Made by a program: the position numbers and the translations under genes. 48,755 bases of DNA from Octopus bimaculoides (lineage: Eukaryota), in assembly GCF_001194135.2 (NCBI RefSeq), contig NC_069002.1:24622514-24671268 (forward strand), in the 5' to 3' direction. The notes under the pieces are model-generated. The model had not been told where the DNA came from. It worked only from the letters and a program-made list of their open reading frames with translations, and did no database searches. This document shows, one piece after another, positions 1-33,428 of this stretch (position 1 is the stretch's first letter; each line of letters opens with the position of its first letter).

Positions 1-135
<135 letters not shown>

Positions 136-136
136 A

Positions 137-339
137 GGCGACGAGTTGACAGAAATTTAGCCCGCTGGACGAAATTCTTAGCAGTATTTCGCCCATCACC
201 ACGTTCTGAGTTCAAATTCCCCCAAAGTTGACTTTCCCTTACATCCTTTTGGGGTCGATAAATTATGTACTAGTGTAACTCTGGCTCGATGTAATTGACA
301 CTCCCCCAAAATGGCTTCTCTCGTGGCAAAATTTGAAAC

Positions 340-1952: not shown

Positions 1953-2804
1953 GTGGGTGTGATGGATAAATTGCTGCCATTTTTCTATTTTTAATTTCGC
2001 GCGTGCGCTTTTTTGCTTCTGGTTTTGTCGACTACACAATACAGTAGGGTCTGCTGGGCACCGTCTGTGAGAAAAATAGCACCATGACGCAATTCACTCA
2101 GCCAAAAATTTGCAAACTACGTGCTGTATTGCTTGGCATTCGCGCCGAAAGCTTCAATACGAATATCTCAGAGTATTGGGTGTCAACCTGATTCCCTAAA
2201 ACACGTACCGGGAGTGATAAAAATCAAACATCCAGTCAATATCATACGTGTTTGGAGTGATTACTAATGATGGCGATGTTATGCCTCCTTTCATCTTCCC
2301 ACACAGCCTCAGGCTCAACATAGAGATCTACATCAAGTATCTGGAGGAGGTGCCTGGGTCAAGAGAGTGACTGCTGGAAGACCCTGTGTCTGTCAACAGG
2401 ACTCTGCACCATGCCACACAAGCAGGAGAACACAAACGACCTCATTACTCCTTAATACCTGGCTACCTGACTCCCCAGACTGCAATCCCCTTGATTATTA
2501 TGTGTGGGGTGCAGCTGAGCGAGAGACCAGCAAAACTCCTCATAACACCAAAGATGATTTGAAGGCAAGGATTATGGCAGCATTCACCAACTTAAACAAG
2601 GAGACCGTCCAGCAGAGTTGTAGGAGACTCCGAAGTCGTCTGGAGGCTGTGGTTGAAGCCAGTAGCGATTTTATTGAAGAAATTTACTCTTTAGAATTTC
2701 AAGACATTGTTTTGTAAATTTGATAAATATATCTGTAAAAATGAGATGTCAGTGTTATTTTTATTTTTGCCTAATTTAGACGACAATTTATTCACCACAC
2801 CCTG
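1953..2804 (+). mobile_element. Internally deleted Tc1/mariner-superfamily transposon, maT/DD37D-like transposase remnant
   Basis: Imperfect TIRs GGGTGTGATGGATAAATTG (1955) and CAATTTATTCACCACACCCTG (ends 2804). Translation gives KHPVNI..VFGVITNDGDVMPPFIFP, QQDSAPCHTSRRTQ and WLPDSPDCNPLDYYVWG (ORF 2367-2717), typical catalytic-domain motifs. Frameshifted. Confidence 0.85.
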
Positions 2805-5887: not shown

Positions 5888-6102
5888 ATTCTTCTCTACT
5901 CTAGGCATAAGGCTCGAAATTTTGTGGGAGGGGCCCAGTCGATTAGATCAACCCCAGTACGAAACTGGTACTTAATTTATCGACACCGAAATGATGAAAG
6001 GCAAAGTCGACCTCGGCAGAATTTGAACTCAGAACGTAAAGACAGACGAAACACCGCTAAGAATTTCGCCCGGCGTGCTAGCGTTTCTGCCAGCTCGCTG
6101 CC
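5888..6102 (-). mobile_element. SINE family A (tail 3), well preserved
   Basis: Reverse complement of head (CTGCCAGCTCGCTGCC), B box (GAATTTGAACTC), body (GATGAAAGGCAAAGTCGACCTCGGC) and tail (TAGGCATAAGGCTCGAAATTT). Confidence 0.92.
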
Positions 6103-6388
6103 TTCTTATCCAACCATATTACTGCAATAATGAGTGCAATATTGTACTCGTAAACTAAAGAGCGACAATTTTCTCGCTTCAAGTTCTCTGGGGTTCAATC
6201 CTTATCGCAGTTTCTTCAGAAAGATGACACTGTTTTAATTCAACTATTGGTGTTTCCATAACTTTCTTCTCAATATATTTCTGCCTTAATCTACACTTGC
6301 TATTATAAATCTTAAAAACAAAATCTGGATGAGGAAGAAAAAATAGATTCTTGCATAGTCCATGTTTGTTTTGTTACTGTCAGTAGAA

Positions 6389-8337: not shown

Positions 8338-9701
8338 TTGGGTTGATAACTAAGTTCCCACCGATTTTTTAAAGTTTGGAATTTATTGCATTTTTAAATT
8401 TTGGAATCTATTTCTTTCGAGAATTCTATTTTTGAATCATTTTGGAATCTATTTTGTTTTTAACTAGTTAATTTTAATAACTTTTTGTTTATTTTCAGAT
8501 CATTAAAATTGAATGTCAAGTTAAGATAAACAAGCATTTGACACCTCGTTTTTGCTTTTAATCAAGGTCCTAAGGCTGCAAAAGCTGTGTATGGAGAGGG
8601 TGCCATAGCTGAAAGAACCGCTCGTGATTGGTATGCCAAGTTCAAAAATGGAAGATTTTGACCTCAAAGACGCACCTCGTTCTGGCCATCCAGTTGAGTT
8701 CGATGAAGAGCGATTAAGCCAACTTTTGCACGAAAATTCTCGTCAAACGACAAGGGAACTGGCAGAGAAAATGGAATGCTCTCACACTGTTATAGAGAAG
8801 CATCTTCATTTGATAGGAAAGGTATGGAGCATGGGTTCCGCATACTTTAAGTGACAACAACAAGAATCAACGAACCACAATCTCCGCTGGTTTCCTCGAT
8901 CGTCATCGCTCAACTCATGGACACAAGCAACGATTCCTTTACCGAATCGTTACTGGCGACGAAAAATGGTGCCTTTACATCAACATGAAGCAGCGTAAGG
9001 AATGGCTTAGCCCCGGTAAACAAGCGACACCGCGCGTGAAACAAGATCTTCATCCGCATAAAACGATGTTGTGCGTATGGTGGGACTGAGAAGGGATTAT
9101 CCATTACGAATTGCTTGAACGGATCCAAATGGTCAGCGCAGAACTCTATGTTCAACAGATGGAACGACTCAACACGGCTGTTCAAGAGAAAAGACCTAAT
9201 CGGCAGCATGGAGTTCTTCTGCTGCACGACAACGCCCGCCCTCATGTCGCCAATATGACCAAGGAAGCCATTCAAANNNNNNNNNNNNNNNNNNNNNNNN
9301 NNNNNNNNNNNNNNNNNNNNNNNNNNNNNNNNNNNNNNNNNNNNNNNNNNNNNNNNNNNNNNNNNNNNNNNNNNNNNNNNNNNNNNNNNNNNNNNNNNNN
9401 NNNNNNNNNNNNNNNNNNNNNNNNNNNNNNNNNNNNNNNNNNNNNNNNNNNNTTCTTTCAAATACTATGCGCGAAGTTTCGTTCAATACTGATGCAGAAT
9501 TGAGAGCTTGGTTGCATCAATTTTTCGAGTCGAAATCGGATGATTTCTACCAACGAGGTATTGAAAATCTTGTTGAACGTTGGGAAGAAGTTGTAAATAA
9601 CAAGGGTGAATACATTATTGATTAATTAGTTGTTATTTTTTATTAAACCTTTTAAAAAATTTAAATTTTAAAAAACCGCGGTAAGTTAGTTGCCAACTCA
9701 A
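8338..9701 (+). mobile_element. mariner (DD34D-type) transposon, full length but inactivated, with an assembly gap
   Basis: TA target duplications; ~30-bp TIRs TTGGGTTGATAACTAAGTTCCCACCG and CGCGGTAAGTTAGTTGCCAACTCAA. Motifs PRSGHP, WVPHTL, RIVTGDEKWCLY, KTMLCVWWD, HDNARPH and LVERWEEVV occur across frameshifts and stops. Confidence 0.95.
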
Positions 9702-10207: not shown

Positions 10208-11160
10208 AGTTAAGGAAGAGATGAAAACAAGCCCAGAAGAAGAGCAAAGAATGGCTATTTTATTATTATTAAAGCGACATGCTAGTTAAGGAAGAGATGA
10301 AAAAAGAAGCCAAGAAGAAGAGCAAAGAAGAATGACTAAAAAACCGGTGCATGGCCGACACCCACGGAGAGTAAACAAACCAGACGTAGAAAAACGAGAC
10401 ACTCATGTATGGATGAAGTGCTCAGGACTGAAGGCTGAAACCGAAGGTTTTATCATAGCAGCACAAGATCAAAGCTTGGCAACCAGGGCTTACCACAACA
10501 AAATAATGAACGATGGCACTGACCCGAAATGCAGAATGTGTCATGAGCAGGATGAAAGAGTGGACCACATCTTAACTGGATGCACAACGCTTGCAAAAAC
10601 TGAATATATTCATAGACACGATATATATCAATTGGAAGATATGTAAACACTACCAGCTTCCAACTTTAAAAAGATGGTACCAACATAAACCTGAAGCTGT
10701 GACCGAAAATGATGATGTAACAGTACACTGGGACATGCCAATCAACACCGATAAAGAAATCATGGGAAACAGGCCGGACATAATCATCAAGGATGGGAAG
10801 AATAAGAAATGCTTGATGATAGATGTGACATTACCATCAGAGAGAAATGTGTCCATTAAAGAAGTTGAGAAGTTATTTAAGTACAAAGACCAAGAAATAG
10901 AAGTGACCAAGATGTGGGGAATGAAAAGCAGCACAGCACTAGTGGTGATTGGAGCGTTAGGGCGAACTAAAAAGGGCCTTGATAAGCAGCTCAACAAACT
11001 CCCTTACAGGGTTAACGTGGGAGAACTTCAGAAAATGGTGTTACTAGGTTCCGCACACATTTTACGTCATGTAATCTCCATGAGATGAGGACCTGCTGTG
11101 ACCCTAGGGCCAAGGGATAACTCCAGTTCAACAGAAGACAACGACCCATTTTTTTAAAAT
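10208..11160 (+). mobile_element. 5'-truncated R4/Dong-like non-LTR retrotransposon with restriction-like endonuclease (copy 1)
   Basis: ORFs 10332-10646 and 10591-11088 (frameshifted): LKAETEGFIIAAQDQSL, CCHC knuckle CRMC..DHILTGC, RHD, RPDIII..IDVT..K..KY. Short 3' UTR ending in (AAT)n. Confidence 0.9.
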
Positions 11161-11187
11161 AATAATAATAATACTATTATTATTATT

Positions 11188-12977
11188 CACTCCTCTTTTG
11201 TCTAGCCTTAATACCTCTCACGAAACTGCTCGATGATTTACAATATGTCTATAAAATGATTGATAAAAATATAAATCATCTCGTTTACATGTATGATTTA
11301 AAGAGCTTCGCAAAAAAGTGACCAACAACTCAAGGGCTTTCTAGCAATTGTTAAACAATTCAGTGATGACATCAGAATGCAATTTGGCCTCGATAAATGT
11401 GCAAAAGCTACCTTTATCAAAGGAAAACGACAGAAACATCCAATGTTAATCTTGACCAGCAAAATGTCATAAAGAAATTAGAGCCAGCGGAGAGCTACAA
11501 ACATCTAGGGTTATTTCAAGGGGACTGAATCAAACAGTGATGAGGGAAATAATCAGAAGAGAACGTTATCGCAGGGTAAGGGCAACACTGAAGACATTGC
11601 TGAATGCAAGAAACAAGATCGAAGAGATCAATACTTTAGCCATACCAGTCGTGACTTACAGTTTCAGTATCATTAACTGGTCAATTACTGAAAAATGTAA
11701 GCTTGACAGAAACATACGAAAATTGTTGGCAATGCATAGAATGCACCGCCCTAAGGCACATATAGAACGACTTTACTTGTCAAGAAAAGAGGATTGCCGT
11801 GGACTTTTACAACTGGAACTAACAAATAAGATTGCTACAATTGGTTTAGACACCTACCTGAAAAATTCTGATGACTGGATATTAAAACTTGTATCAAATC
11901 ATGAAAAGAAGAAAACATCATACTCAGTAACAAAACAGGCAAAGGAATATCTAAGTGAATTCCAAATGCAACAAATCCCAGAATTAGACGTACTGGAAAC
12001 AAGTACAGAAAATGCTAAGCGTATGAAAACCCGTGCTAAAACTGCTGCTTTAGATACTCTTACTGATAAATGGCAAGAAAAACCTCTCAATGGAAAATAC
12101 CCAAAGAGAGCTAATTGGGCCGATGTTGACAAAGCACTTACCCATCAATGGTTAGTGTCTTCTGTCTTAAAATCAGAAACAGAAGGGTTTATGATAGCAG
12201 CCCAAGATCAATGCCTACCTACAAGAATCTACCAGGCCAACATTTTAAAGAACGGCAGTAGCCCAACATGTCGTGTATGTAAACAACAAAATGAAACCAT
12301 TGATCATGTTAACTCCAAGTGCAGTATTCGTGCGCCTACGGAGTATTTCAACAGGCATGATAGAGCAGCACAGTGTATTCGCCGGGTAGTTTGCAAAAAC
12401 CTGGACCTGCTACATGATAAAAAGTGGTGGGAACACAAACTACCCCCAGTGCTTGAAAATTATTACATCACACTCCTCTGGAACTTCACCGTTCAAACTG
12501 ACAGAAAGACAGATGCGAATAGGCCAGACATTATATTGAAAGACTTCAAACAAAAATCATGCTTCTTCATTGATATGTGTCAAGACCTACCAAACATTAA
12601 GCAAGTATAAAGATTTTGAAATAGAAATTAACAAAATGTGGAACCTGAAGACTAAAACAATACCTGTTGTCATGGGTGTCATAGGAATGATAGCAAAAGG
12701 GTCTGATTCCAACCTAGCTCAGATTCCAGGAAACCCCCAAATGGCAGAAATTGAAAAGATAGTGCTCATGGGAACTGCCCATATTCTGCGTGTAATACTG
12801 TCTATGTAATCTCAAAATTTAAAACAAACTTATATTTTTTCTAGAAGAATACTATGTGCAAAGCCAGGTATATGACACCCTAGGCATAACAGCAACTTGA
12901 ACTTCTAACTTGTGTCTTGATGTTTGTGGGTAAGACTTGGAGTCAACTTATATAAATATAAAGTAAAAGTCAATCAT
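11188..12977 (+). mobile_element. 5'-truncated R4/Dong-like non-LTR retrotransposon, RT C-terminus plus RLE (copy 2, distinct subfamily)
   Basis: Starts inside the RT (SPLLFCLAL, HLVYMYDLK for YMDD, FGLDKCA). ORF 11537-12610 has RLYLSRKEDCRGL, CRVC..DH..C, RHD and RPDIIL; frameshift to KYKD..MW at 12570-12809. 3' UTR ends in (TAA)n. Confidence 0.93.
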
Positions 12978-14683: not shown

Positions 14684-15895
14684 GAGCGACAAGCCGTGGC
14701 AGAGTCGTTAGCACACTGGCCTGAATGCTTAGTGGCCTTTCGTCTGTCTTTACGCTCGCAGTTCAAATTCCGCCAAGGATGCCTTTGCCTTTCATCCCTC
14801 TGGGGTCGATATCATAAGCACTTTTTGAGCATTGGGGTCGGTATAATTGATTTAACCCCTCCTCTGAAATCGCAGGGCCAGTGCCAAAATTTAAAACCAA
14901 TATCTCAAGTTCACAAAGGGCGGTGAGCTGGCAGAATCGTTAGCATGCTGGGTAAAATACTTCGTAGCATTTCGTCTATCATTAAGTTCTGAGTTCAAAT
15001 ACTGTCTAGGTTGACTTTGCTTTTAATCCCATCGGAGTTGATAAAATAATTACAAGTTGAGTACAACAATAAACCTCATCACGAAGGCGGCGAACTGGCG
15101 GGATCGTAGAACGCCGGGCAAAATGCATTGCAGCATCACATCCTTCTAAATTCAAATTCTGCGGAGGTCGACTTTGCTTTTCATCTTTTCTGGCTCAATA
15201 AAATATCTACCAGTTGAGTGCTGAAGTCGATGAAATCAACTTAACCACCCCCGCCGAAATTACTGGCCTTGTGTCAAAAATTGAAGCCAAAATCTTATTT
15301 TCACGGGAAGTCTGACTGCAACATATAGAGATAGAAATAGCCAATAGGAGTTTTTTTTTTTACAGTGTAGACATAAATCATTGATAATTTCTGGTGAAAT
15401 CGTGCCAAAATATTTTTTTTAATCCCTGCAAACATATACATAATGAGTATCGAGTTAGTGATGCATTAGAGCCAAGTACATTCGTTGCTATTGTATTATT
15501 ATATTATTATTAAGGCGGTGAACTAACAGAACCGCTTGCCTGCCAGCAAAGTGCATCGAGGCATTTCGTTCGTCTTTACGTTGTGAGTTCAAATTCTGCC
15601 GATGTCGACTTTGCCATTCATCCTTTCGGAGTCGATAGAATAAGAGTACTGAAGTCGATGTAATCGACTATCCCTCTCTCTTTCATATTTCAGAACTGGT
15701 GTCTATAATAGAAAGGATGATTATTAAAGCGGTGAACTAACAGGACCGTTACCCATCAGACGAAATGCTGTTAGGCATTTCGTCCGTCTGTTCGGCATCG
15801 ATAAAATATATACCATTTAAGTACTGAAGTCAATGTGATCGATTTCTCTCTCCTCGAAAACCCACTTGCCTTGTGCTAAATTTTGAAATGATTAT
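14684..15895 (+). mobile_element. Head-to-tail cluster of five SINE A copies
   Basis: Copies at about 14684-14900, 14919-15065, 15086-15290, 15514-15724 and 15727-15895, each with a GGCGG-type head and GTCGATA body; four retain the GTTCAAA box and the fifth is internally deleted. Confidence 0.88.
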
Positions 15896-15959
15896 ATTAT
15901 TATATTATCGATCCGGTAACTATGAAGGAGGGCGTTAATAACTATTTTAAACACAGATA

Positions 15960-16669
15960 CTGAGCTCCAAATTTGAAGAGAAGGAAGTAGTTCATTATAT
16001 CGATCTAAGCAGCCGACTGGTGCTTTATTGTATTGACCTCGGAATTATCAAAGACGGAGGTAATTTCTACATAATTTCGACTCGAGATCTAAAGAGACGA
16101 AGCATATAACGCAAAGCTAACGACCCTCTAATGATTCTGTCACTCCACTTCCCCTTATATTGCATTTGTATTAATAACGGGATATCATTTGTGTGTTTTT
16201 TTTGTTTTTTTTTGGCACAAGGCCAGCGATTTTGAGGGGTAGGCAAGACGATTACATCGGCCCCAGTCTTCAACTGGTACTTATTTTATTGACACCGAAT
16301 CGACCGCAGCGGAATTTGTGCTCAGAACGTAAAGACGGATGAAATGCCGCTAAGCATTTCGTCCGGCATACTAACGTCTCTGCTTGCCCACCGCCTTAAA
16401 TAATATGCATTGGGATATCAATAATAGCATGGTAATAGTTCTCTACTCATTCGTCGTAAATATTGGATCGAAATTCTGGTAGAATGCCAGCAATTTCGTG
16501 GGCAGGCGTAAGTCGATTACACCGATCCCACTGATCAGGTGGTACTTGATTTATCGACCCCATAAGGACGAAAGTCAAAGGCGACCTCGACGGAATTTGA
16601 GCTCAGAACGTAGAGACGGACGAAACGCTGGTACGGATTTTCCCCATGCGGCTGTGTTAGCACGCCGCC
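15960..16669 (-). mobile_element. Cluster of three minus-strand SINE A copies
   Basis: Copies at about 15960-16120 (degenerate), 16210-16395 and 16478-16669, with reverse-complement head (CCGCC) and GGAATTTG..CTCAGAACGT. Confidence 0.82.
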
Positions 16670-17405
16670 TTAAATAATAGCATAGTAATATCATTAACAG
16701 CATGGAAACAGGCCTGTTTTTGTGGTTCTTTACTTATCTATAATAAATATATAAGATATTAATGTCCAAGTCCACCGGCTCGTTTAAGGACAAAACTAAG
16801 ATCAATGATCAATCATGTATATTATTATTTCAAGTTCGATAAAATATGCGTCAATACTACAGTTGTAATATTTGGAGTCATTTAATCTCATATGTATAAT
16901 GTCTTTCAAGAAAAATATATTCTATTAGAATGATACATTTTTTACGTGATTTATCGAGGAGCTATTTGGAGAGAAGTGGGTAAATAGTAAAAAGAAATGA
17001 AGTATTCTTTGAGATATGTAGTCTGCAAACTTTCTGATTGAGTTCAACTTCTACTGAGATAGACTTCCTTATTCATTCCTCAAGAGTAGAATTGAATTAT
17101 TTGACGCTCTTTCAATCACACGTTTATATAAGTATGGCCTTGTAACTTTAGGAGCAATTAGTAATATCATTGTGAGAGTATAATTCTTACAGCTCTAAAT
17201 GCTTTCTTACACAAACTCACGCACGCGAATATGGCTCCGAAACGGTTAGCATTCTCTCCTGATGACCCCTAAAACCTAATAGCATCCGGTCAGCGGAGTT
17301 TTATACTGGTAGCACTTGCACAAGGAAGCTGTTTGCAAGTTTCTAAATATGCACACACACATACATATACACAAATGCACGTACATACATATACACAAAT
17401 GCACG

Positions 17406-18226: not shown

Positions 18227-18548
18227 TACTTAACCTGAATCGGTTTTTATAAAAGAGTCAGTTGACAACGCTGGATGATGGAACGAAGAATAAGTGGAAG
18301 AGAGACATTGATATCCATCTAAACGAAATATCCCTAAGATATACATTTACTTCTTAAGAACAAACTCCATTAAGTTATTAACTTCGCATATAATTGACAT
18401 ACAACACGGAATTAAAACTTCCCACGCTAGAATTACTGCTTCCTGTGAAACGAGAACATGCAAACATTTTTAACGAAGGCTTATAAACTTAGTCACCGCA
18501 GTAACATCAATATATAGTCATTGCATATTATAGTGCCTTATTCAGCGT

Positions 18549-19690
18549 GGTGGCGATTTGACAGAACCGTTAGGACGCCGGGCGAAATGCTTAGCTGCAT
18601 TTCGTCTGTCTTTACGTTCTGAGTTCAAATTCCGCCGAGGTCGACCTTGCCTGCCATCCTTTCGGTGTCGATTAAATAAATGCCCTGTACGCACTGGGGT
18701 CGATGCTCTTAATCCCTTTGTCTGTCCTTGTTTGTCCCCTCTATGTTTATGTGGGCAATAAAGAAATAAATTTCGCAGAATCATTAGCACGTCAGGAAAA
18801 TATGATTTGCGGCATTTCTTTCGGTTCTCAAGGTTCTGAGTTCAAATGCCACCGTGTTCGACTATGTTTTTCATTCTTTCGTGATTGATAACACAAGTGC
18901 CACATGAGTACTAGGGATCGTTGTATGGCCCTCGCCTCAAATTTCAATCCTTAGAAAGGATCATTATAGCACACACCAAGGCGGCAAGCTAGCAGACTCG
19001 TTAACACGTCGGATAAAAAGTGCTTAATGACTTTGCGTACGCTTCTTTACCTTTTGAATTAGAATCCCGCTGAGGGCCATTTTGACTTTCATTCCTTCGA
19101 AGACGATAAAGTAATCTACCAGTGAAATACTGGGGTTGATGTAATCGTCTAGCTCACTCTTAAAATTGCTGGCATTGTGCCAACATTTTAAGCCATTATT
19201 GTGCCTCATCCTTTCTAGTCACGTACAAGAAATTACCAAAGCTTTCAAAGTCGTGTCATGCTGAGCTTCCATGATGATGTCTTGTGGTAGCATCAGATAT
19301 ATCTCCAAAAAATACCAGTATTCCATGGCGAGGCTGCAGAATACTTTGTGGTTGATCATCAAAGTATTAGTGAGACCATCGTCCGTGTGCTGCACATACC
19401 ATATTTCCAGTGCTCCATAGTAAGCATCGTATACTTCATATGATAAAAGTTCGATCAAGGAAGGTAATTCAAATGACAGTCAAATATTCCCTTAATAACC
19501 CACAACAATATATCTCGTGATTTGCTGGCAGAATCGCTAGCAAGGTACCTAGAGGCATTTCGTCCGTCTTTACGTTCTGGTTTTAAATTCAGCCGATAAA
19601 ATAAGTTCCAGCTGAGAACGGGGTTCACTGTAATCGACTTAGCTCCTCCACCGGAATTGCTGGCCTTGTGCCAAAATTTGAATTCAATAC
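18549..19690 (+). mobile_element. Cluster of four SINE A copies (tails 2, 3, 1, 1)
   Basis: Copies at about 18549-18768, 18772-18965, 18980-19200 and 19520-19690, separated by short unique spacers. Confidence 0.85.
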
Positions 19691-20732: not shown

Positions 20733-20948
20733 CTTTTCTACAATAAGTACCGAAGCCTGAAATTTCGAGGAGAGGAACTGGTCGATTTCATCGATTCCAG
20801 TAATTAACTGGAAATTATTTTATCGACTCCGAGAGGATGAAAAGCGAAGTCGACCTCGGCAGAATTTGAACTCAGAACGTAAAGACAGATGAAATACCAC
20901 TGAATATTTTTTTACCTGGCATGCTTATGATTCTGCCCGTTCGCTGCC
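20733..20948 (-). mobile_element. SINE family A (tail 3)
   Basis: GAAGTCGACCTCGGCAGAATTTGAACTCAGAACGTAAAGACAG and terminal TTCGCTGCC. Confidence 0.9.
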
Positions 20949-21194
20949 TTCAAGGTACATATTTAATAATATGGCATTTTGACATACTCAGGCATTTCGA
21001 CCGGCCAAATTCATTTTAAAATGGTCCTAACTGTTTCTGTATAATTTGGAAACAAGAATACCAGTTTTTAAAGGAGGAAATAGTCTATAACATCAACAAG
21101 TCCTTCCATCAAAACTATTAGTATTGTGTCTTCTAAATTATTTGATTTATACTTAAATCTATCCATCTTAAAAAGACAAAAACAAAACAATAGT

Positions 21195-28541: not shown

Positions 28542-29206
28542 CGAAGGGAAGTCAAAACTATCCGCACTTTCACCATAACATATCTTTATTATTGTCACAC
28601 TGCCTTCTGTGCTTGCGTGCTTATAGTTGGTACTATTGTGGTCATGTGATTGCAGTTTGAGCCTGATAGTGCCATTTTTCTTTCTGGCTTTACAGTGTAA
28701 GCATGGCCGCTCCACCTGCAATGTGCGCCAAAGAAGAACAAAGAGCAGCGATCTGAGTGGCGATAATGGCGAACTGGTTTACCATTACTATCTCTTGAGC
28801 TTGTTGAACCTTCTCGTCAGTGGTGGAGGTTGACGGGCGTCCTTGTTTCCTCTTCGTGCGTCACGCTTGTCCGGCCACTTTTAAACTACTCGATCCACTC
28901 ATCCAAAATTATATGCAGTAGTGCACTCTCCCCGTATTATGCAAAGAGCCTCCGATGAATTTCAACAACTCAAAGATTCCGACCAGAAAAATCGGATCAC
29001 TGCTCTTTGTTCTTCTTTGATGCATAAAAATGTGAAGCGGCCATTCTTACACTGGAAAGTCAGAAGGAAAAATGGTGCGATCAGGCTAAAACTTGGATCA
29101 CGTGACTATAATAGTACCAACTATAAGCACGCATTCGCAAAAGGCAGTGGAACAGTAATAATGATATATTATGGCGAATGTGCGGATGACTTTTGACTTC
29201 TGCTCG
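28542..29206. mobile_element. mariner-derived fold-back MITE with ~215-bp inverted arms
   Basis: TA|CGAAGGGAAGTCAAAACTATCCGCAC ... GTGCGGATGACTTTTGACTTCTGCTCG|TA. The arms are about 80% identical by eye; the left arm includes a transposase start (MCAKEEQRAAI) and the right arm retains the KEEQRA codons. Confidence 0.85.
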
Positions 29207-29306: not shown

Positions 29307-30009
<703 letters not shown>

Positions 30010-32298: not shown

Positions 32299-32370
<72 letters not shown>

Positions 32371-32398
32371 GTAATAATAATAATAATAATAATAATAG
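32270..32398. repeat. (AAT)n microsatellite
   Basis: Direct inspection. Confidence 0.99.
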
Positions 32399-32612
32399 TG
32401 TAGCCTGAGGATTGGAATTTCTTCCAACAGTCTCATCTGTTATGCGTCAAGTAAAGCATACATTACACACTCGTCGTAAATATGCAGTGAATCAATTGAC
32501 TTAGATTTTGTGAACAGACGTTTTTACAAATGACAGATTAGTTATTTGAATATGTGTGTGCGTGTGAGTGCGTGTGTACGTATATATATATGTATGTTTA
32601 CGGAGATTGATA

Positions 32613-32945
32613 GATGAAAAGAAAATGTTATTTGCACTGTGTACAGCGAGACCTGAAACGATTATTGGCATATTAATTCTTAACACGTCTAGGCGGGTTT
32701 AGACGTAAAATGTGATGGTCGCTGTAGCGTGCGTCACAGGAAAATAACCTCTCATTATACGATTACAGTGGATTCAACACGGTCACCTCGGTCGTCATAA
32801 AACAGAGAAGTTATTGTGCTATGATGCACGCTAAAAAGATCAGCGTATTTTGTGTCTGAATCTGTCAAAACGTGTTAAGAATGAATGTGCCAGTAATTGC
32901 TCCAGGTTTTGCAGTACACGGTGCAAACGGTGATTTTTTTTCATC
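32613..32945 (+). other. 333-nt imperfect fold-back (rod-like hairpin) with G.U-biased mismatches
   Basis: Hand alignment of 141 gap-free columns gives 104 Watson-Crick pairs, 21 G.U on the + strand, 7 G.U only on the - strand, and 9 transversion mismatches; 11-nt terminal loop at 32772-32782. Confidence 0.9.
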
Positions 32946-33016
32946 AGTTGGCAGATATAAGCATTAGACAGCATTTTGTTCGATGAAAGCATAAACAAGG
33001 CCAGCGACCTTGTTCA

Positions 33017-33085
33017 GGCTCAGAGTTCCGGTTGCTTCTGACTGATGAGACACAAAATGTCGAAATACTAGTGTTCTATAATGTC
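33017..33085 (+). ncRNA. Hammerhead ribozyme-like core, probably decayed
   Basis: CTGATGA (33042-48), GACA/CAAAA/TGTC stem II, GAAA (33062-65). Stem I hairpin TCAGAG/TTCTGA abuts the core. In this type-III geometry the cleavage triplet reads GGC instead of GUC, and stem III is weak. Confidence 0.55.
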
Positions 33086-33171
33086 ATACGCCAATGAGCC
33101 GAGTGTGTCGAATACACTTTTGCATAAAAGGAAAAGTTATTCTTTTGTCACCTACGCCTAGACATATTCAT

Positions 33172-33365
33172 TTCAAATCTTGGCACAGGGCCAGCAATTT
33201 CGGGGTAGGGTGTGTGTCGATTATAACGACCAGTTCAACTGTTACTTATTTTATCGTGCCCCGATGGATGAAAGGCAAAGTCAACCTCGGCGGAATTTCA
33301 ACTCAGAACGTAAGGACAGACGAAATGCAGCCAAGCAGTGCTCACGGTTCTGACAGCTCGCCACC
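33172..33365 (-). mobile_element. SINE family A (tail 1)
   Basis: TTGGCACAGGGCCAGCAATTT..GATGAAAGGCAAAGTCAACCTCGGCGGAATTTCAACTCAGAACGT..CAGCTCGCCACC. Confidence 0.88.
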
Positions 33366-33428
33366 TTTGCCCTGCCAAGACATATTAAGAATAAACATAC
33401 AAATAGTCATATACATGTAGATGTGTGT

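What the first reader, a model, noticed from the sequence alone, without database searches (positions are those of the whole stretch)
32613..32945. 333-nt rod-like hairpin whose mismatches are G.U wobbles on one strand
Seen: the arms align for 141 columns with no indel at only ~74% identity. Of the 28 transition mismatches, 21 form G.U pairs if the + strand folds and only 7 do if the - strand folds (exact binomial, one-sided p about 0.006, computed by hand). The + strand would therefore be ~89% paired. Established: neutral decay of an inverted repeat gives no such strand asymmetry, whereas selection on a folded single strand does, as in hairpin-RNA loci and rod-like circular RNAs. Inference: this is or was a structured + strand RNA (or ssDNA intermediate) under pairing constraint. 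It lacks a TA-flanked TIR and matches no other element in the window.
Basis: partly seen in the sequence, partly recalled or inferred. Interest (0 to 1): 0.75.

Follow-up and report, generated by a model that had tools for sequence, protein, structure and literature searches.

The report
Decaying inverted-repeat transposon copy, wobble-skewed
The 333-base hairpin is real and its wobble-pair skew is real, but it is an old, untranscribed copy of a dispersed inverted-repeat family, so selection on a folded RNA remains an unproven minority reading.

Summary
The arms 32613-32753 and 32805-32945 align without gaps. They give 104 Watson-Crick pairs, 21 G.U on the + strand, 7 A.C and 9 transversion mismatches. 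The + strand folds at -159 kcal/mol and the - strand at -122. The skew survives MFE folding and gapped alignment. It is absent from 16 SINE copies (132:145) and from four other inverted repeats in the window.

The p-value is 0.0125 two-sided and was chosen post hoc. The mismatches cluster: 9 lie in one 26-nt patch and 4 are adjacent. Collapsing neighbours gives 15:6, p 0.08.

The hairpin is not unique. Each of four related species holds 49-79 contigs matching the arms, mostly as solo 60-100-nt pieces. Orthologues about 95% identical exist in three other species.

Three RNA-seq libraries give no read from this locus, and no indexed RNA run holds its words. Rfam finds nothing.

Between species there is one A:U to G:C double change and three or four more pair-restoring changes, one of them an adjacent dinucleotide. 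There are also four or five pair-breaking changes, and stem divergence is close to flank divergence.

Best reading: an old MITE-like inverted-repeat copy, with arm-templated DNA repair and a skew of unresolved cause. RNA selection is about 0.2 probable.

The parts
32613..32753 (+). Left arm of the inverted repeat. Its outer part, 32617-32727, is the segment shared with most family copies.
   Evidence: Family depth is 35-80 times single copy at 32630-32690.
32754..32804 (+). 51-nt spacer (loop). It is single copy and the most diverged part between species, with 4 substitutions in 51 nt.
32805..32945 (+). Right arm. Only 32846-32881 recruits many family contigs (7-18 times single copy). The outer part is much more diverged from the family than the left arm is.
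32693..32718 (+). 26-nt patch holding 9 of the 21 G.U mismatches and no A.C. The left arm has G or T where the reverse complement of the right arm has A or C. By family majority, at least 32695, 32700, 32706 and 32712 are private changes of this copy (A>G, C>T, C>T, A>G).
32625..32630 (+). 6-nt block in which every base differs from the partner arm (ATGTTA against TCACCG). It gives four adjacent G.U, one A.C and one transversion. The family carries the right-arm version, so this is probably not six independent events.
   Evidence: and the loose-end consensus.
32731..32731 (+). Left member of the pair 32731:32827. The pair is G:C in the source species and A:T in species B and C. Species D and the family majority also have T at 32827. 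This is the one full compensatory double change.
32827..32827 (+). Right member of the compensatory pair 32731:32827.
32906..32907 (+). Adjacent dinucleotide, GT in the source species and AG in species B, C and D. GT is exactly complementary to 32651-32652 (AC). Both pairs were restored together, which suggests copying from the other arm.
32931..32931 (+). T in the source species (G.U with G32627) and C in species B, C and D (G:C). The family state implies the path A:T to G.T to G:C.
32538..32605 (.). TG/TA microsatellite directly upstream. It is not part of the element.
   Evidence: It gives only weak mir-297-like Rfam noise.
33165..33367 (-). Flanking copy of the hyper-abundant tRNA-like SINE. 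It was used as a neutral control and gives 6:4 for the two classes of transition (C>T+A>G against G>A+T>C on the + strand).

Best explanation
The hairpin is an old, non-coding inverted-repeat copy of a dispersed repeat family. It is either a MITE-like deletion derivative of an element with terminal repeats of about 110-140 bp, or a head-to-head pair of that terminal unit. It was in place before four related species diverged (shown). Its arms have decayed to 74% complementarity (shown). It is not detectably transcribed (shown for three libraries and for the indexed RNA runs). The excess of G.T-type over A.C-type arm differences on the + strand is real. It rests on a small number of partly clustered events, and some of those are shared with family sub-types. 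I treat it as a stochastic or clustered mutational outcome, not as evidence of function (inferred). The pair-restoring substitutions seen since the species split are best explained by DNA-level copying between the arms. That copying could be template switching during replication or short-tract arm-to-arm conversion, and neither needs an RNA (inferred).
For: Family membership: 49-79 contigs per species match the arms at 80% or more. They lie in both orientations, at 35-80 times single-copy depth on 32630-32690. Most are solo 60-100-nt matches inside contigs of up to 1.6 kb. A few contigs join both arms, such as 32689>32838 through 39 nt, present in all four species.

Age: the orthologues are about 95% identical, while the arms differ by 26%. 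None of the 21 G.U sites in the covered part changed, apart from 32627:32931.

No transcription: depth is 0 on 32606-33149 in three RNA-seq runs, while the flanking SINEs have thousands of reads. At 80% likeness only 5-10 reads per library map. All carry family-specific letters and run on into unlike sequence. All 15 listed RNA runs of the species that are kept as indexed contigs hold 0.00 of the words.

No known RNA family matches.

Weak constraint: divergence between the source species and species C is 8-11/282 (2.8-3.9%) in the stem, about 4.9% in the right flank and 4/51 in the loop. There are 16 disruptive mismatches. Four or five pair-breaking substitutions are seen: 32834, 32938, 32680, 32916 and possibly 32907. 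In species B and C the base of the stem is disturbed by a 12-nt duplication and a 1-nt deletion.

Clustering: 9 G.U lie in 26 nt and 4 are adjacent. The collapsed count is 15:6, p = 0.078.

Templated repair: 32906-32907 changed as a dinucleotide to the exact complement of the other arm.

Pathway: a survey of molluscs, including an octopus, found no dedicated endo-siRNA pathway and no clear Dicer processing of long dsRNA (PMC12479628).
Against: The 21:7 skew is not explained by a regional strand bias (132:145 in 16 SINE copies, none individually skewed). It is not seen in other inverted repeats of the window (10:5, 16:12, 7:8, 8:9). G.U-type mismatches are 57% of all mismatches, against 28% expected from the SINE spectrum. 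A.C and transversion mismatches are both depleted about 3-fold relative to G.U, which is what + strand pairing selection predicts. Seven G.U sites have CpG>TpG form and no A.C site has CpG>CpA form. Four or five of the 9-10 placed stem substitutions create a Watson-Crick pair, where 13.5% are expected (P = 0.035 to 0.006). The + strand stays about 32-34 kcal/mol more stable in the partial reconstructions of species B and C. Arm-to-arm conversion at 74% identity over 141 bp is not known to be efficient. The RNA libraries were sampled at about 6%, and no small-RNA data could be examined.
Confidence: 0.55

Rival explanations
1. The + strand is, or was, transcribed into a long hairpin RNA. This could be a domesticated MITE hairpin such as a small-RNA precursor or a dsRNA-binding or ADAR substrate. 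Selection keeps it paired: G.U is tolerated, while A.C and transversion mismatches are purged or compensated.
For: The skew is 21:7 and is robust to alignment. It is absent from the neutral controls. A.C and transversion mismatches are depleted equally relative to G.U. There is one A:U to G:C double change, one A:U to G.U to G:C path (32627:32931), and mismatch-to-pair changes at 32906 and 32740. The excess of pair-creating substitutions has P = 0.006-0.035. The + strand fold is favoured in three species. A run of eight T ends the + strand hairpin.
Against: No read from the locus appears in three RNA-seq libraries at 90% or 80% likeness, and no RNA run holds its words. The hairpin is one of tens of family copies, most of them solo arms. 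Stem divergence is close to flank divergence. There are four or five pair-breaking changes, and the base of the stem is disturbed in species B and C. If G.U were at the neutral level, each arm would have to be about 30% diverged, yet the left arm is only about 7% from the family majority. The formal covariation count has no power: one pair, with 162 of 500 shuffles as high. No endo-siRNA pathway was detected in molluscs.
Confidence: 0.2
2. A single-stranded DNA hairpin forms preferentially on the + strand, either on the lagging-strand template or in a transposition intermediate of the family. G.T wobbles are tolerated there, and template switching restores the pairs. The constraint or bias is at DNA level but specific to one strand.
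For: The strand skew. The dinucleotide 32906-32907 rewritten to the complement of the other arm. Pair-restoring changes without any RNA.
Against: There is no evidence on replication direction. Most family copies are solo arms, so a hairpin intermediate is not a family property. G.T is the best-recognised mismatch for repair, so it would not be spared. No mechanism that purges A.C in this way is established for eukaryotic repeats.
Confidence: 0.08
3. Strand-asymmetric mutation raised C>T and A>G on the + strand of this locus, through deamination of the non-transcribed strand or of the lagging-strand template.
For: Both C>T and A>G are in excess on the same strand. That is the direction of transcription-associated asymmetry (established knowledge: Green et al. 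2003, recalled from memory and not checked here). Seven CpG>TpG forms stand against no CpG>CpA form. The 2-kb window has GC skew +0.18.
Against: Sixteen SINE copies in the window show no such bias (132:145). The copy 220 nt away gives 6:4. The unique flanks show no transcription in either direction. Known asymmetries are about 1.2-1.6-fold, not 3-fold.
Confidence: 0.07
4. One or both arms passed through an RNA copy that was hyper-edited by ADAR and then reverse-transcribed. That would leave clustered A>G changes on the + strand.
For: Clusters of A>G are inferred on both arms: 32695, 32712, 32883, 32887 and 32893.
Against: About half of the G.U-forming changes are C>T. Three of the six candidate A>G sites in the patch have a 5' G, which ADAR disfavours (sequence; the ADAR preference is from my own knowledge). 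The arms have no 3' poly(A) in any orientation. Nothing else suggests retroposition.
Confidence: 0.03

Closest known systems
MITEs and foldback-type non-autonomous DNA elements with long terminal inverted repeats
   Same: It is small (333 bp), non-coding, and made almost entirely of two inverted arms with a short spacer. It is multi-copy and dispersed, old, and shared by related species. Deletion variants that join both arms exist.
   Different: No target-site duplication or TA flank was found. The termini are an A-run and a T-run, not a recognised superfamily terminus. Most genomic matches are solo arms. No autonomous partner was identified.
Hairpin-RNA (hpRNA) or long-inverted-repeat loci that give endo-siRNAs, as in Drosophila hpRNAs and plant LIRs
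   Same: It has a long, nearly continuous hairpin of several hundred nt. G.U pairs are tolerated on one strand only.
   Different: No transcript was detected and no small-RNA data were available. A survey of molluscs found no dedicated endo-siRNA pathway (PMC12479628). The hairpin has no known target gene.
Hairpins created or maintained by template-switch mutations in DNA replication (10.1101/2023.04.19.537475; only its title and abstract were seen)
   Same: Pairing is restored by clustered changes that copy the complement of the other arm, as at the dinucleotide 32906-32907. No selection is needed.
   Different: Template switching predicts no strand skew of G.U against A.C. The event was not modelled formally here.
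Rod-like circular RNAs: viroid-like RNAs, retrozyme circRNAs and deltavirus-like agents
   Same: The predicted structure is rod-like, about 330 nt long and about 89% paired.
   Different: There is no ribozyme or other Rfam match, no tandem genomic repeats and no RNA reads or circular junctions. The copies are dispersed DNA copies.

Membership tests
MITE / foldback element | Terminal inverted repeats making up most of a short (under 800 bp) non-coding element | tested here: met
   141-nt arms, 51-nt spacer, no ORF.
MITE / foldback element | Many dispersed copies in the genome | tested here: met
   49-79 matching contigs per species, at 35-80 times single-copy depth. Most are solo arms.
MITE / foldback element | Target-site duplication flanking the element | tested here: not met
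   The flanks are ...GATTGATA|GATG...CATC|AGTTGG. TA occurs on the left only, and there is no 2-11-nt direct repeat.
MITE / foldback element | An autonomous element sharing the termini | not testable with these tools
   Contig sequences of family members cannot be retrieved. The mariner remnants in the window show no arm similarity.
hpRNA / endo-siRNA locus | Transcription of the inverted repeat as one strand | tested here: not met
   Depth is 0 in three RNA-seq libraries at 90% and 80% likeness, and no RNA run holds the words. Sampling was about 6% per run.
hpRNA / endo-siRNA locus | Phased 21-23-nt small RNAs from the stem | not testable with these tools
   No small-RNA run could be listed.
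Structured RNA under selection (general) | Significant covariation across orthologues | tested here: inconclusive
   One pair changed on both sides in three sequences, with 162 of 500 shuffles as high. The excess of pair-creating substitutions has P = 0.006-0.035 and depends on how the changes are polarised.
Structured RNA under selection (general) | Stem more conserved than loop and flanks | tested here: inconclusive
   Stem 2.8-3.9%, flank about 4.9%, loop 7.8%. An earlier Fisher test gave P of about 0.05-0.07, before two more stem changes were found.
Viroid-like / retrozyme circular RNA | Self-cleaving ribozyme motif and tandem or circular copies | tested here: not met
   Rfam at gathering and at E-value thresholds finds nothing on the hairpin. 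There is no tandem arrangement.
pre-miRNA | Hairpin of about 60-80 nt matching a known family | tested here: not met
   The hairpin is 333 nt and has no Rfam match.

The most novel reading that the evidence does not exclude
A MITE-like hairpin, kept in at least four octopod-like species, is expressed from the + strand in a tissue or stage that was not sampled. It would be a long structured RNA whose pairing is maintained by selection, through G.U tolerance and compensatory A:U to G.U to G:C changes. This would be a lineage-specific hairpin-RNA gene in a phylum where no endo-siRNA pathway has been found, perhaps acting as a dsRNA or ADAR ligand.
Probability: 0.18. Interest if true: 0.6.

Novelty: new member of a known kind. 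Interest (0 to 1): 0.3.

Why it matters
If the skew reflected selection, this would be a rare case of a transposon-derived long hairpin RNA under structural constraint in a mollusc. That would bear on how these animals handle endogenous dsRNA. As the evidence stands, the result is mainly a caution. One decayed inverted repeat can show a nominally significant G.U strand skew, and even compensatory-looking changes, while being an untranscribed repeat copy. A strand-skew test needs a family consensus, neutral controls and expression data before it is read as function.

Tried and rejected
- **Six-kb RNA lay:** I repeated it on 32300-33300.
- **Orthologue-only lay at 94% on 32590-32960:** this lost the contigs of species B and C because of the 12-nt duplication. 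I redid it at 95% on 32606-32952.
- **Second copy in the window:** none found. Only microsatellite noise, plus one 24-nt similarity at 33035-33058 (z about 3).
- **Rfam at gathering and at E-value thresholds:** nothing on the hairpin.
- **Metagenome and viral pattern scans for the family core:** no hits.
- **miRNA-labelled runs:** none listed.
- **Bacterial-type promoter and terminator scan:** nothing found, and it is not relevant to a eukaryote.
- **Regional mutational strand bias:** rejected by the SINE control.
- **ADAR-edited retrocopy:** rejected on sequence context and on the equal share of C>T changes.
- **Full family consensus and element classification:** not achieved, because the tools return differences and depths but no contig sequences. 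The family majority letters come only from contigs at least 80% alike to this copy, each placed on its best-fitting arm. They are therefore biased towards this copy.
- **Unplaced orthologue differences:** three differences in species B and C (most likely in 32610-32629) could not be placed.

Full report
**1. The observation**

The repeat finder reports an inverted repeat with arms 32613-32753 and 32805-32945. The arms are 141 nt, 74% complementary, 51 nt apart and have no indel. Pair by pair, I count 104 Watson-Crick pairs and 21 G.U pairs if the + strand folds. I also count 7 A.C pairs, which would be G.U on the - strand, and 9 transversion mismatches.

The binomial test gives 0.0063 one-sided and 0.0125 two-sided. 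The two-sided value is the fair one, because no strand was named beforehand.

RNAfold gives -159.2 kcal/mol for the + strand (z = -15.3 against shuffles) and -121.5 for the - strand (z = -12.4). The skew is not an alignment artefact. The MFE structures contain 19 G.U (+) against 9 (-), and an optimal gapped alignment gives 23 against 9.

The sequence is genuine. Eleven DNA runs hold all its sampled words, and independent contigs match it 100%.

**2. Is the skew more than chance or mutation bias?**

I ran two controls.

- I aligned 16 copies of the abundant tRNA-like SINE in the window and compared each with their majority consensus, counting in + strand coordinates. C>T+A>G is 132 and G>A+T>C is 145 (89 against 106 outside CpG). 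Transitions to transversions are 277:195.
- No single copy is skewed, and the copy 220 nt downstream of the hairpin gives 6:4. A regional strand-asymmetric mutation process is therefore not the cause.
- The other long inverted repeats in the window give 10:5, 16:12, 7:8 and 8:9.

Against the SINE spectrum, G.U-type mismatches are over-represented: 21 of 37 against 28% expected. A.C and transversion mismatches are each about 3-fold depleted relative to G.U. Seven G.U sites have the form CpG>TpG with the partner arm keeping CpG. No A.C site has the mirror form.

Three things weaken the statistic.

- The mismatches are clustered. Nine of the 21 G.U lie in 32693-32718 and all point the same way.
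- Four more are adjacent, inside a block of six consecutive differences at 32625-32630.
- Merging adjacent sites and dropping that block leaves 15:6 (p = 0.078). The test was also chosen after seeing the data.

**3. What the element is**

Within the window the hairpin has no second copy. In the genome it does.

- Contigs of four species were laid at 80% likeness or more: the source species A and species B, C and D (coded ids). The left arm 32617-32727 then carries 35-80 times single-copy depth, and the right arm 32846-32881 carries 7-18 times.
- Each species has 49-79 matching contigs, in both orientations. Most match for only 60-100 nt inside contigs of up to 1.6 kb. They are solo arms, or terminal repeats of longer elements.
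- A few contigs join both arms. One joins 32689 to 32838 through 39 nt and is present in all four species.
- Homology begins at the A-run at the left end and stops at the T-run at the right end, so the family unit coincides with the arms.
- There is no target-site duplication.

The window is otherwise full of transposon debris. It holds weak, sub-threshold Pfam matches to a mariner transposase and to an RT zinc-binding domain. It also holds a textbook young TA-flanked MITE at 29403-29872.

I conclude that the hairpin is a MITE-like or foldback copy of an unclassified family with long terminal repeats.

**4. Polarising the mismatches**

The family majority differs from this copy at twelve positions: 32652 (T), 32667 (T), 32675 (T), 32695 (A), 32700 (C), 32706 (C), 32712 (A), 32731 (A), 32827 (T), 32834 (C), 32883 (A) and 32887 (A).

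- At least four G.U pairs in the patch are therefore private A>G or C>T changes of the left arm.
- Several outer G.U pairs are A>G or C>T changes of the right arm.
- At 32693, 32697 and 32705, both the left-type state (G) and the right-type state (A) occur in many family members. Those arm differences may be inherited from family sub-types.
- In the outer 61 nt the left arm is about 5% from the family majority, and I estimate the right arm at about 20%. Two arms of one insertion decaying independently would not be expected to differ this much.

These inferences are biased. Only contigs at least 80% alike to this copy are seen, and each is placed on the arm it fits best. Contig sequences cannot be retrieved with these tools.

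Half of the G.U-forming changes are C>T. Three of the six candidate A>G sites in the patch have a 5' G. An ADAR-edited retrocopy is therefore unlikely.

**5. Comparison between species**

Orthologous contigs of species B and C cover 32610-32952, and the contig of species D covers 32778 onward. All are about 95% identical. Stem changes that could be placed:

| Pair | State in A | State in the other species | Effect |
|---|---|---|---|
| 32731:32827 | G:C | A:T in B and C (D and the family majority have T at 32827) | full compensatory double change |
| 32627:32931 | G.U | G:C in B, C, D (family implies A:T to G.T to G:C) | pair strengthened |
| 32652:32906 | C:G | C.A in B, C, D | pair restored in A |
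| 32651:32907 | A:T | A-G in B, C, D | pair restored in A, or broken in the others |
| 32740:32818 | G-G (also in C) | C:G in B | pair created in B |
| 32724:32834 | G-A | G:C in B, C, D | pair broken in A |
| 32620:32938 | A:T | A.C in B and C | pair broken |
| 32680:32878 | T:A | A-A in C | pair broken |
| 32642:32916 | T:A | T-T in D | pair broken |

- The changes at 32906 and 32907 are adjacent. Together they turn AG into GT, the exact complement of 32651-32652.
- Three further differences in B and C could not be placed, and probably lie in 32610-32629.
- A 12-nt duplication behind 32609 and a 1-nt deletion at 32934 disturb the base of the stem in B and C.
- Under the SINE-derived spectrum, only 13.5% of stem substitutions should create a Watson-Crick pair. 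Four or five of the 9-10 placed changes do (P = 0.035 to 0.006).
- The formal pair count on three sequences finds one double change and has no power (162 of 500 shuffles as high).
- Divergence between A and C is 2.8-3.9% in the stem, about 4.9% in the right flank and 7.8% in the loop. That is a hint of constraint at most.
- The + strand stays about 32-34 kcal/mol more stable in the partial reconstructions of B and C.

**6. Transcription**

- No indexed RNA run holds the hairpin's words. All 15 listed RNA runs of the species that are kept as indexed contigs score 0.00.
- In three raw RNA-seq runs, about 12 million reads were sampled from each. Depth is 0 on 32606-33149 on both strands, while the flanking SINEs have thousands of reads.
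- I lowered the threshold to 80% so that hyper-edited reads would not be missed. Only 5-10 reads per library map, and only to the left arm. They carry family letters and run on into unrelated sequence, so they come from other family members.
- Rfam finds nothing.
- A survey of mollusc small RNAs, including an octopus, found no dedicated endo-siRNA pathway (PMC12479628).
- Small-RNA libraries could not be examined.

**7. Verdict**

The best-supported account (about 0.55) is an old, untranscribed inverted-repeat copy of a dispersed family. Pair-restoring changes come from DNA-level copying between the arms. The dinucleotide 32906-32907 is the clearest sign of this. The G.U skew is treated as a small-sample, clustered outcome of unresolved cause.

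Selection on a folded + strand RNA remains a live minority reading (about 0.2). The skew resists the neutral controls, and compensatory paths through G.U are seen.

The decisive tests are a genome-wide, element-oriented analysis of the family and deep stranded and small-RNA data. Neither is available here.

Noticed in passing
window 29403-29872: A young, textbook MITE of about 470 bp, with 97-nt terminal inverted repeats that are 99% complementary. It starts TAGTTTTAGGG and ends CCCTAAAACTA, and sits inside a (TA)n microsatellite, so it is TA-flanked (Tc1/mariner- or Stowaway-like).
   Followed up: partly
window 28560-28715 / 29032-29187: Another inverted repeat, with 156-nt arms at 83% complementarity and a 316-nt spacer. 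Its G.U:A.C ratio is 10:5, so it is not skewed. It is probably another non-autonomous DNA element.
   Followed up: partly
window 33010-33122 (core 33035-33065): A separate dispersed repeat unit of about 110 nt, at roughly 35 times single-copy depth in all four species. The 24 nt at 33035-33058 weakly resemble the inner part of the hairpin arm (TTCTGACTGATGAGACACAAAAT; z about 3).
   Followed up: partly
window 134-299, 5937-6104, 14685-16680, 18547-19150, 20781-20950, 33213-33367, 41520-41690 and others: At least 16 copies of a tRNA-like SINE of about 168 nt, in both orientations. It is hyper-abundant in the genome (depth 10^5-10^6) and heavily represented in RNA-seq on both strands.
   Followed up: partly
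behind window 32609 (orthologues of species B and C): Species B and C carry a 12-nt tandem duplication (ATAGATG[T/A]AAAC) at the left foot of the hairpin. With species D they also lack one T of the T-run at 32934. The two calls print the duplicated letters slightly differently, and this is unresolved.
   Followed up: partly
window 2367-2717, 9111-9503, 10591-12610: Transposon coding remnants. There is a mariner-type transposase fragment (Pfam Transposase_1, E = 0.006, below the curated cut-off) and an ORF with a zf-RVT match (E = 0.001, also below the cut-off). The window also has 3222 N in assembly gaps next to microsatellites.
   Followed up: partly
window 32653-32683: A 31-nt stretch of the left arm recurs at 97% identity in an otherwise unrelated single-copy locus that is conserved in species A, C and D. 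Its flanks there read ATCGTTACTTTGCCCTGTGCGCTGAGAAAT ... TGTTACGCTACATTCACACACAATTACACT.
   Followed up: no
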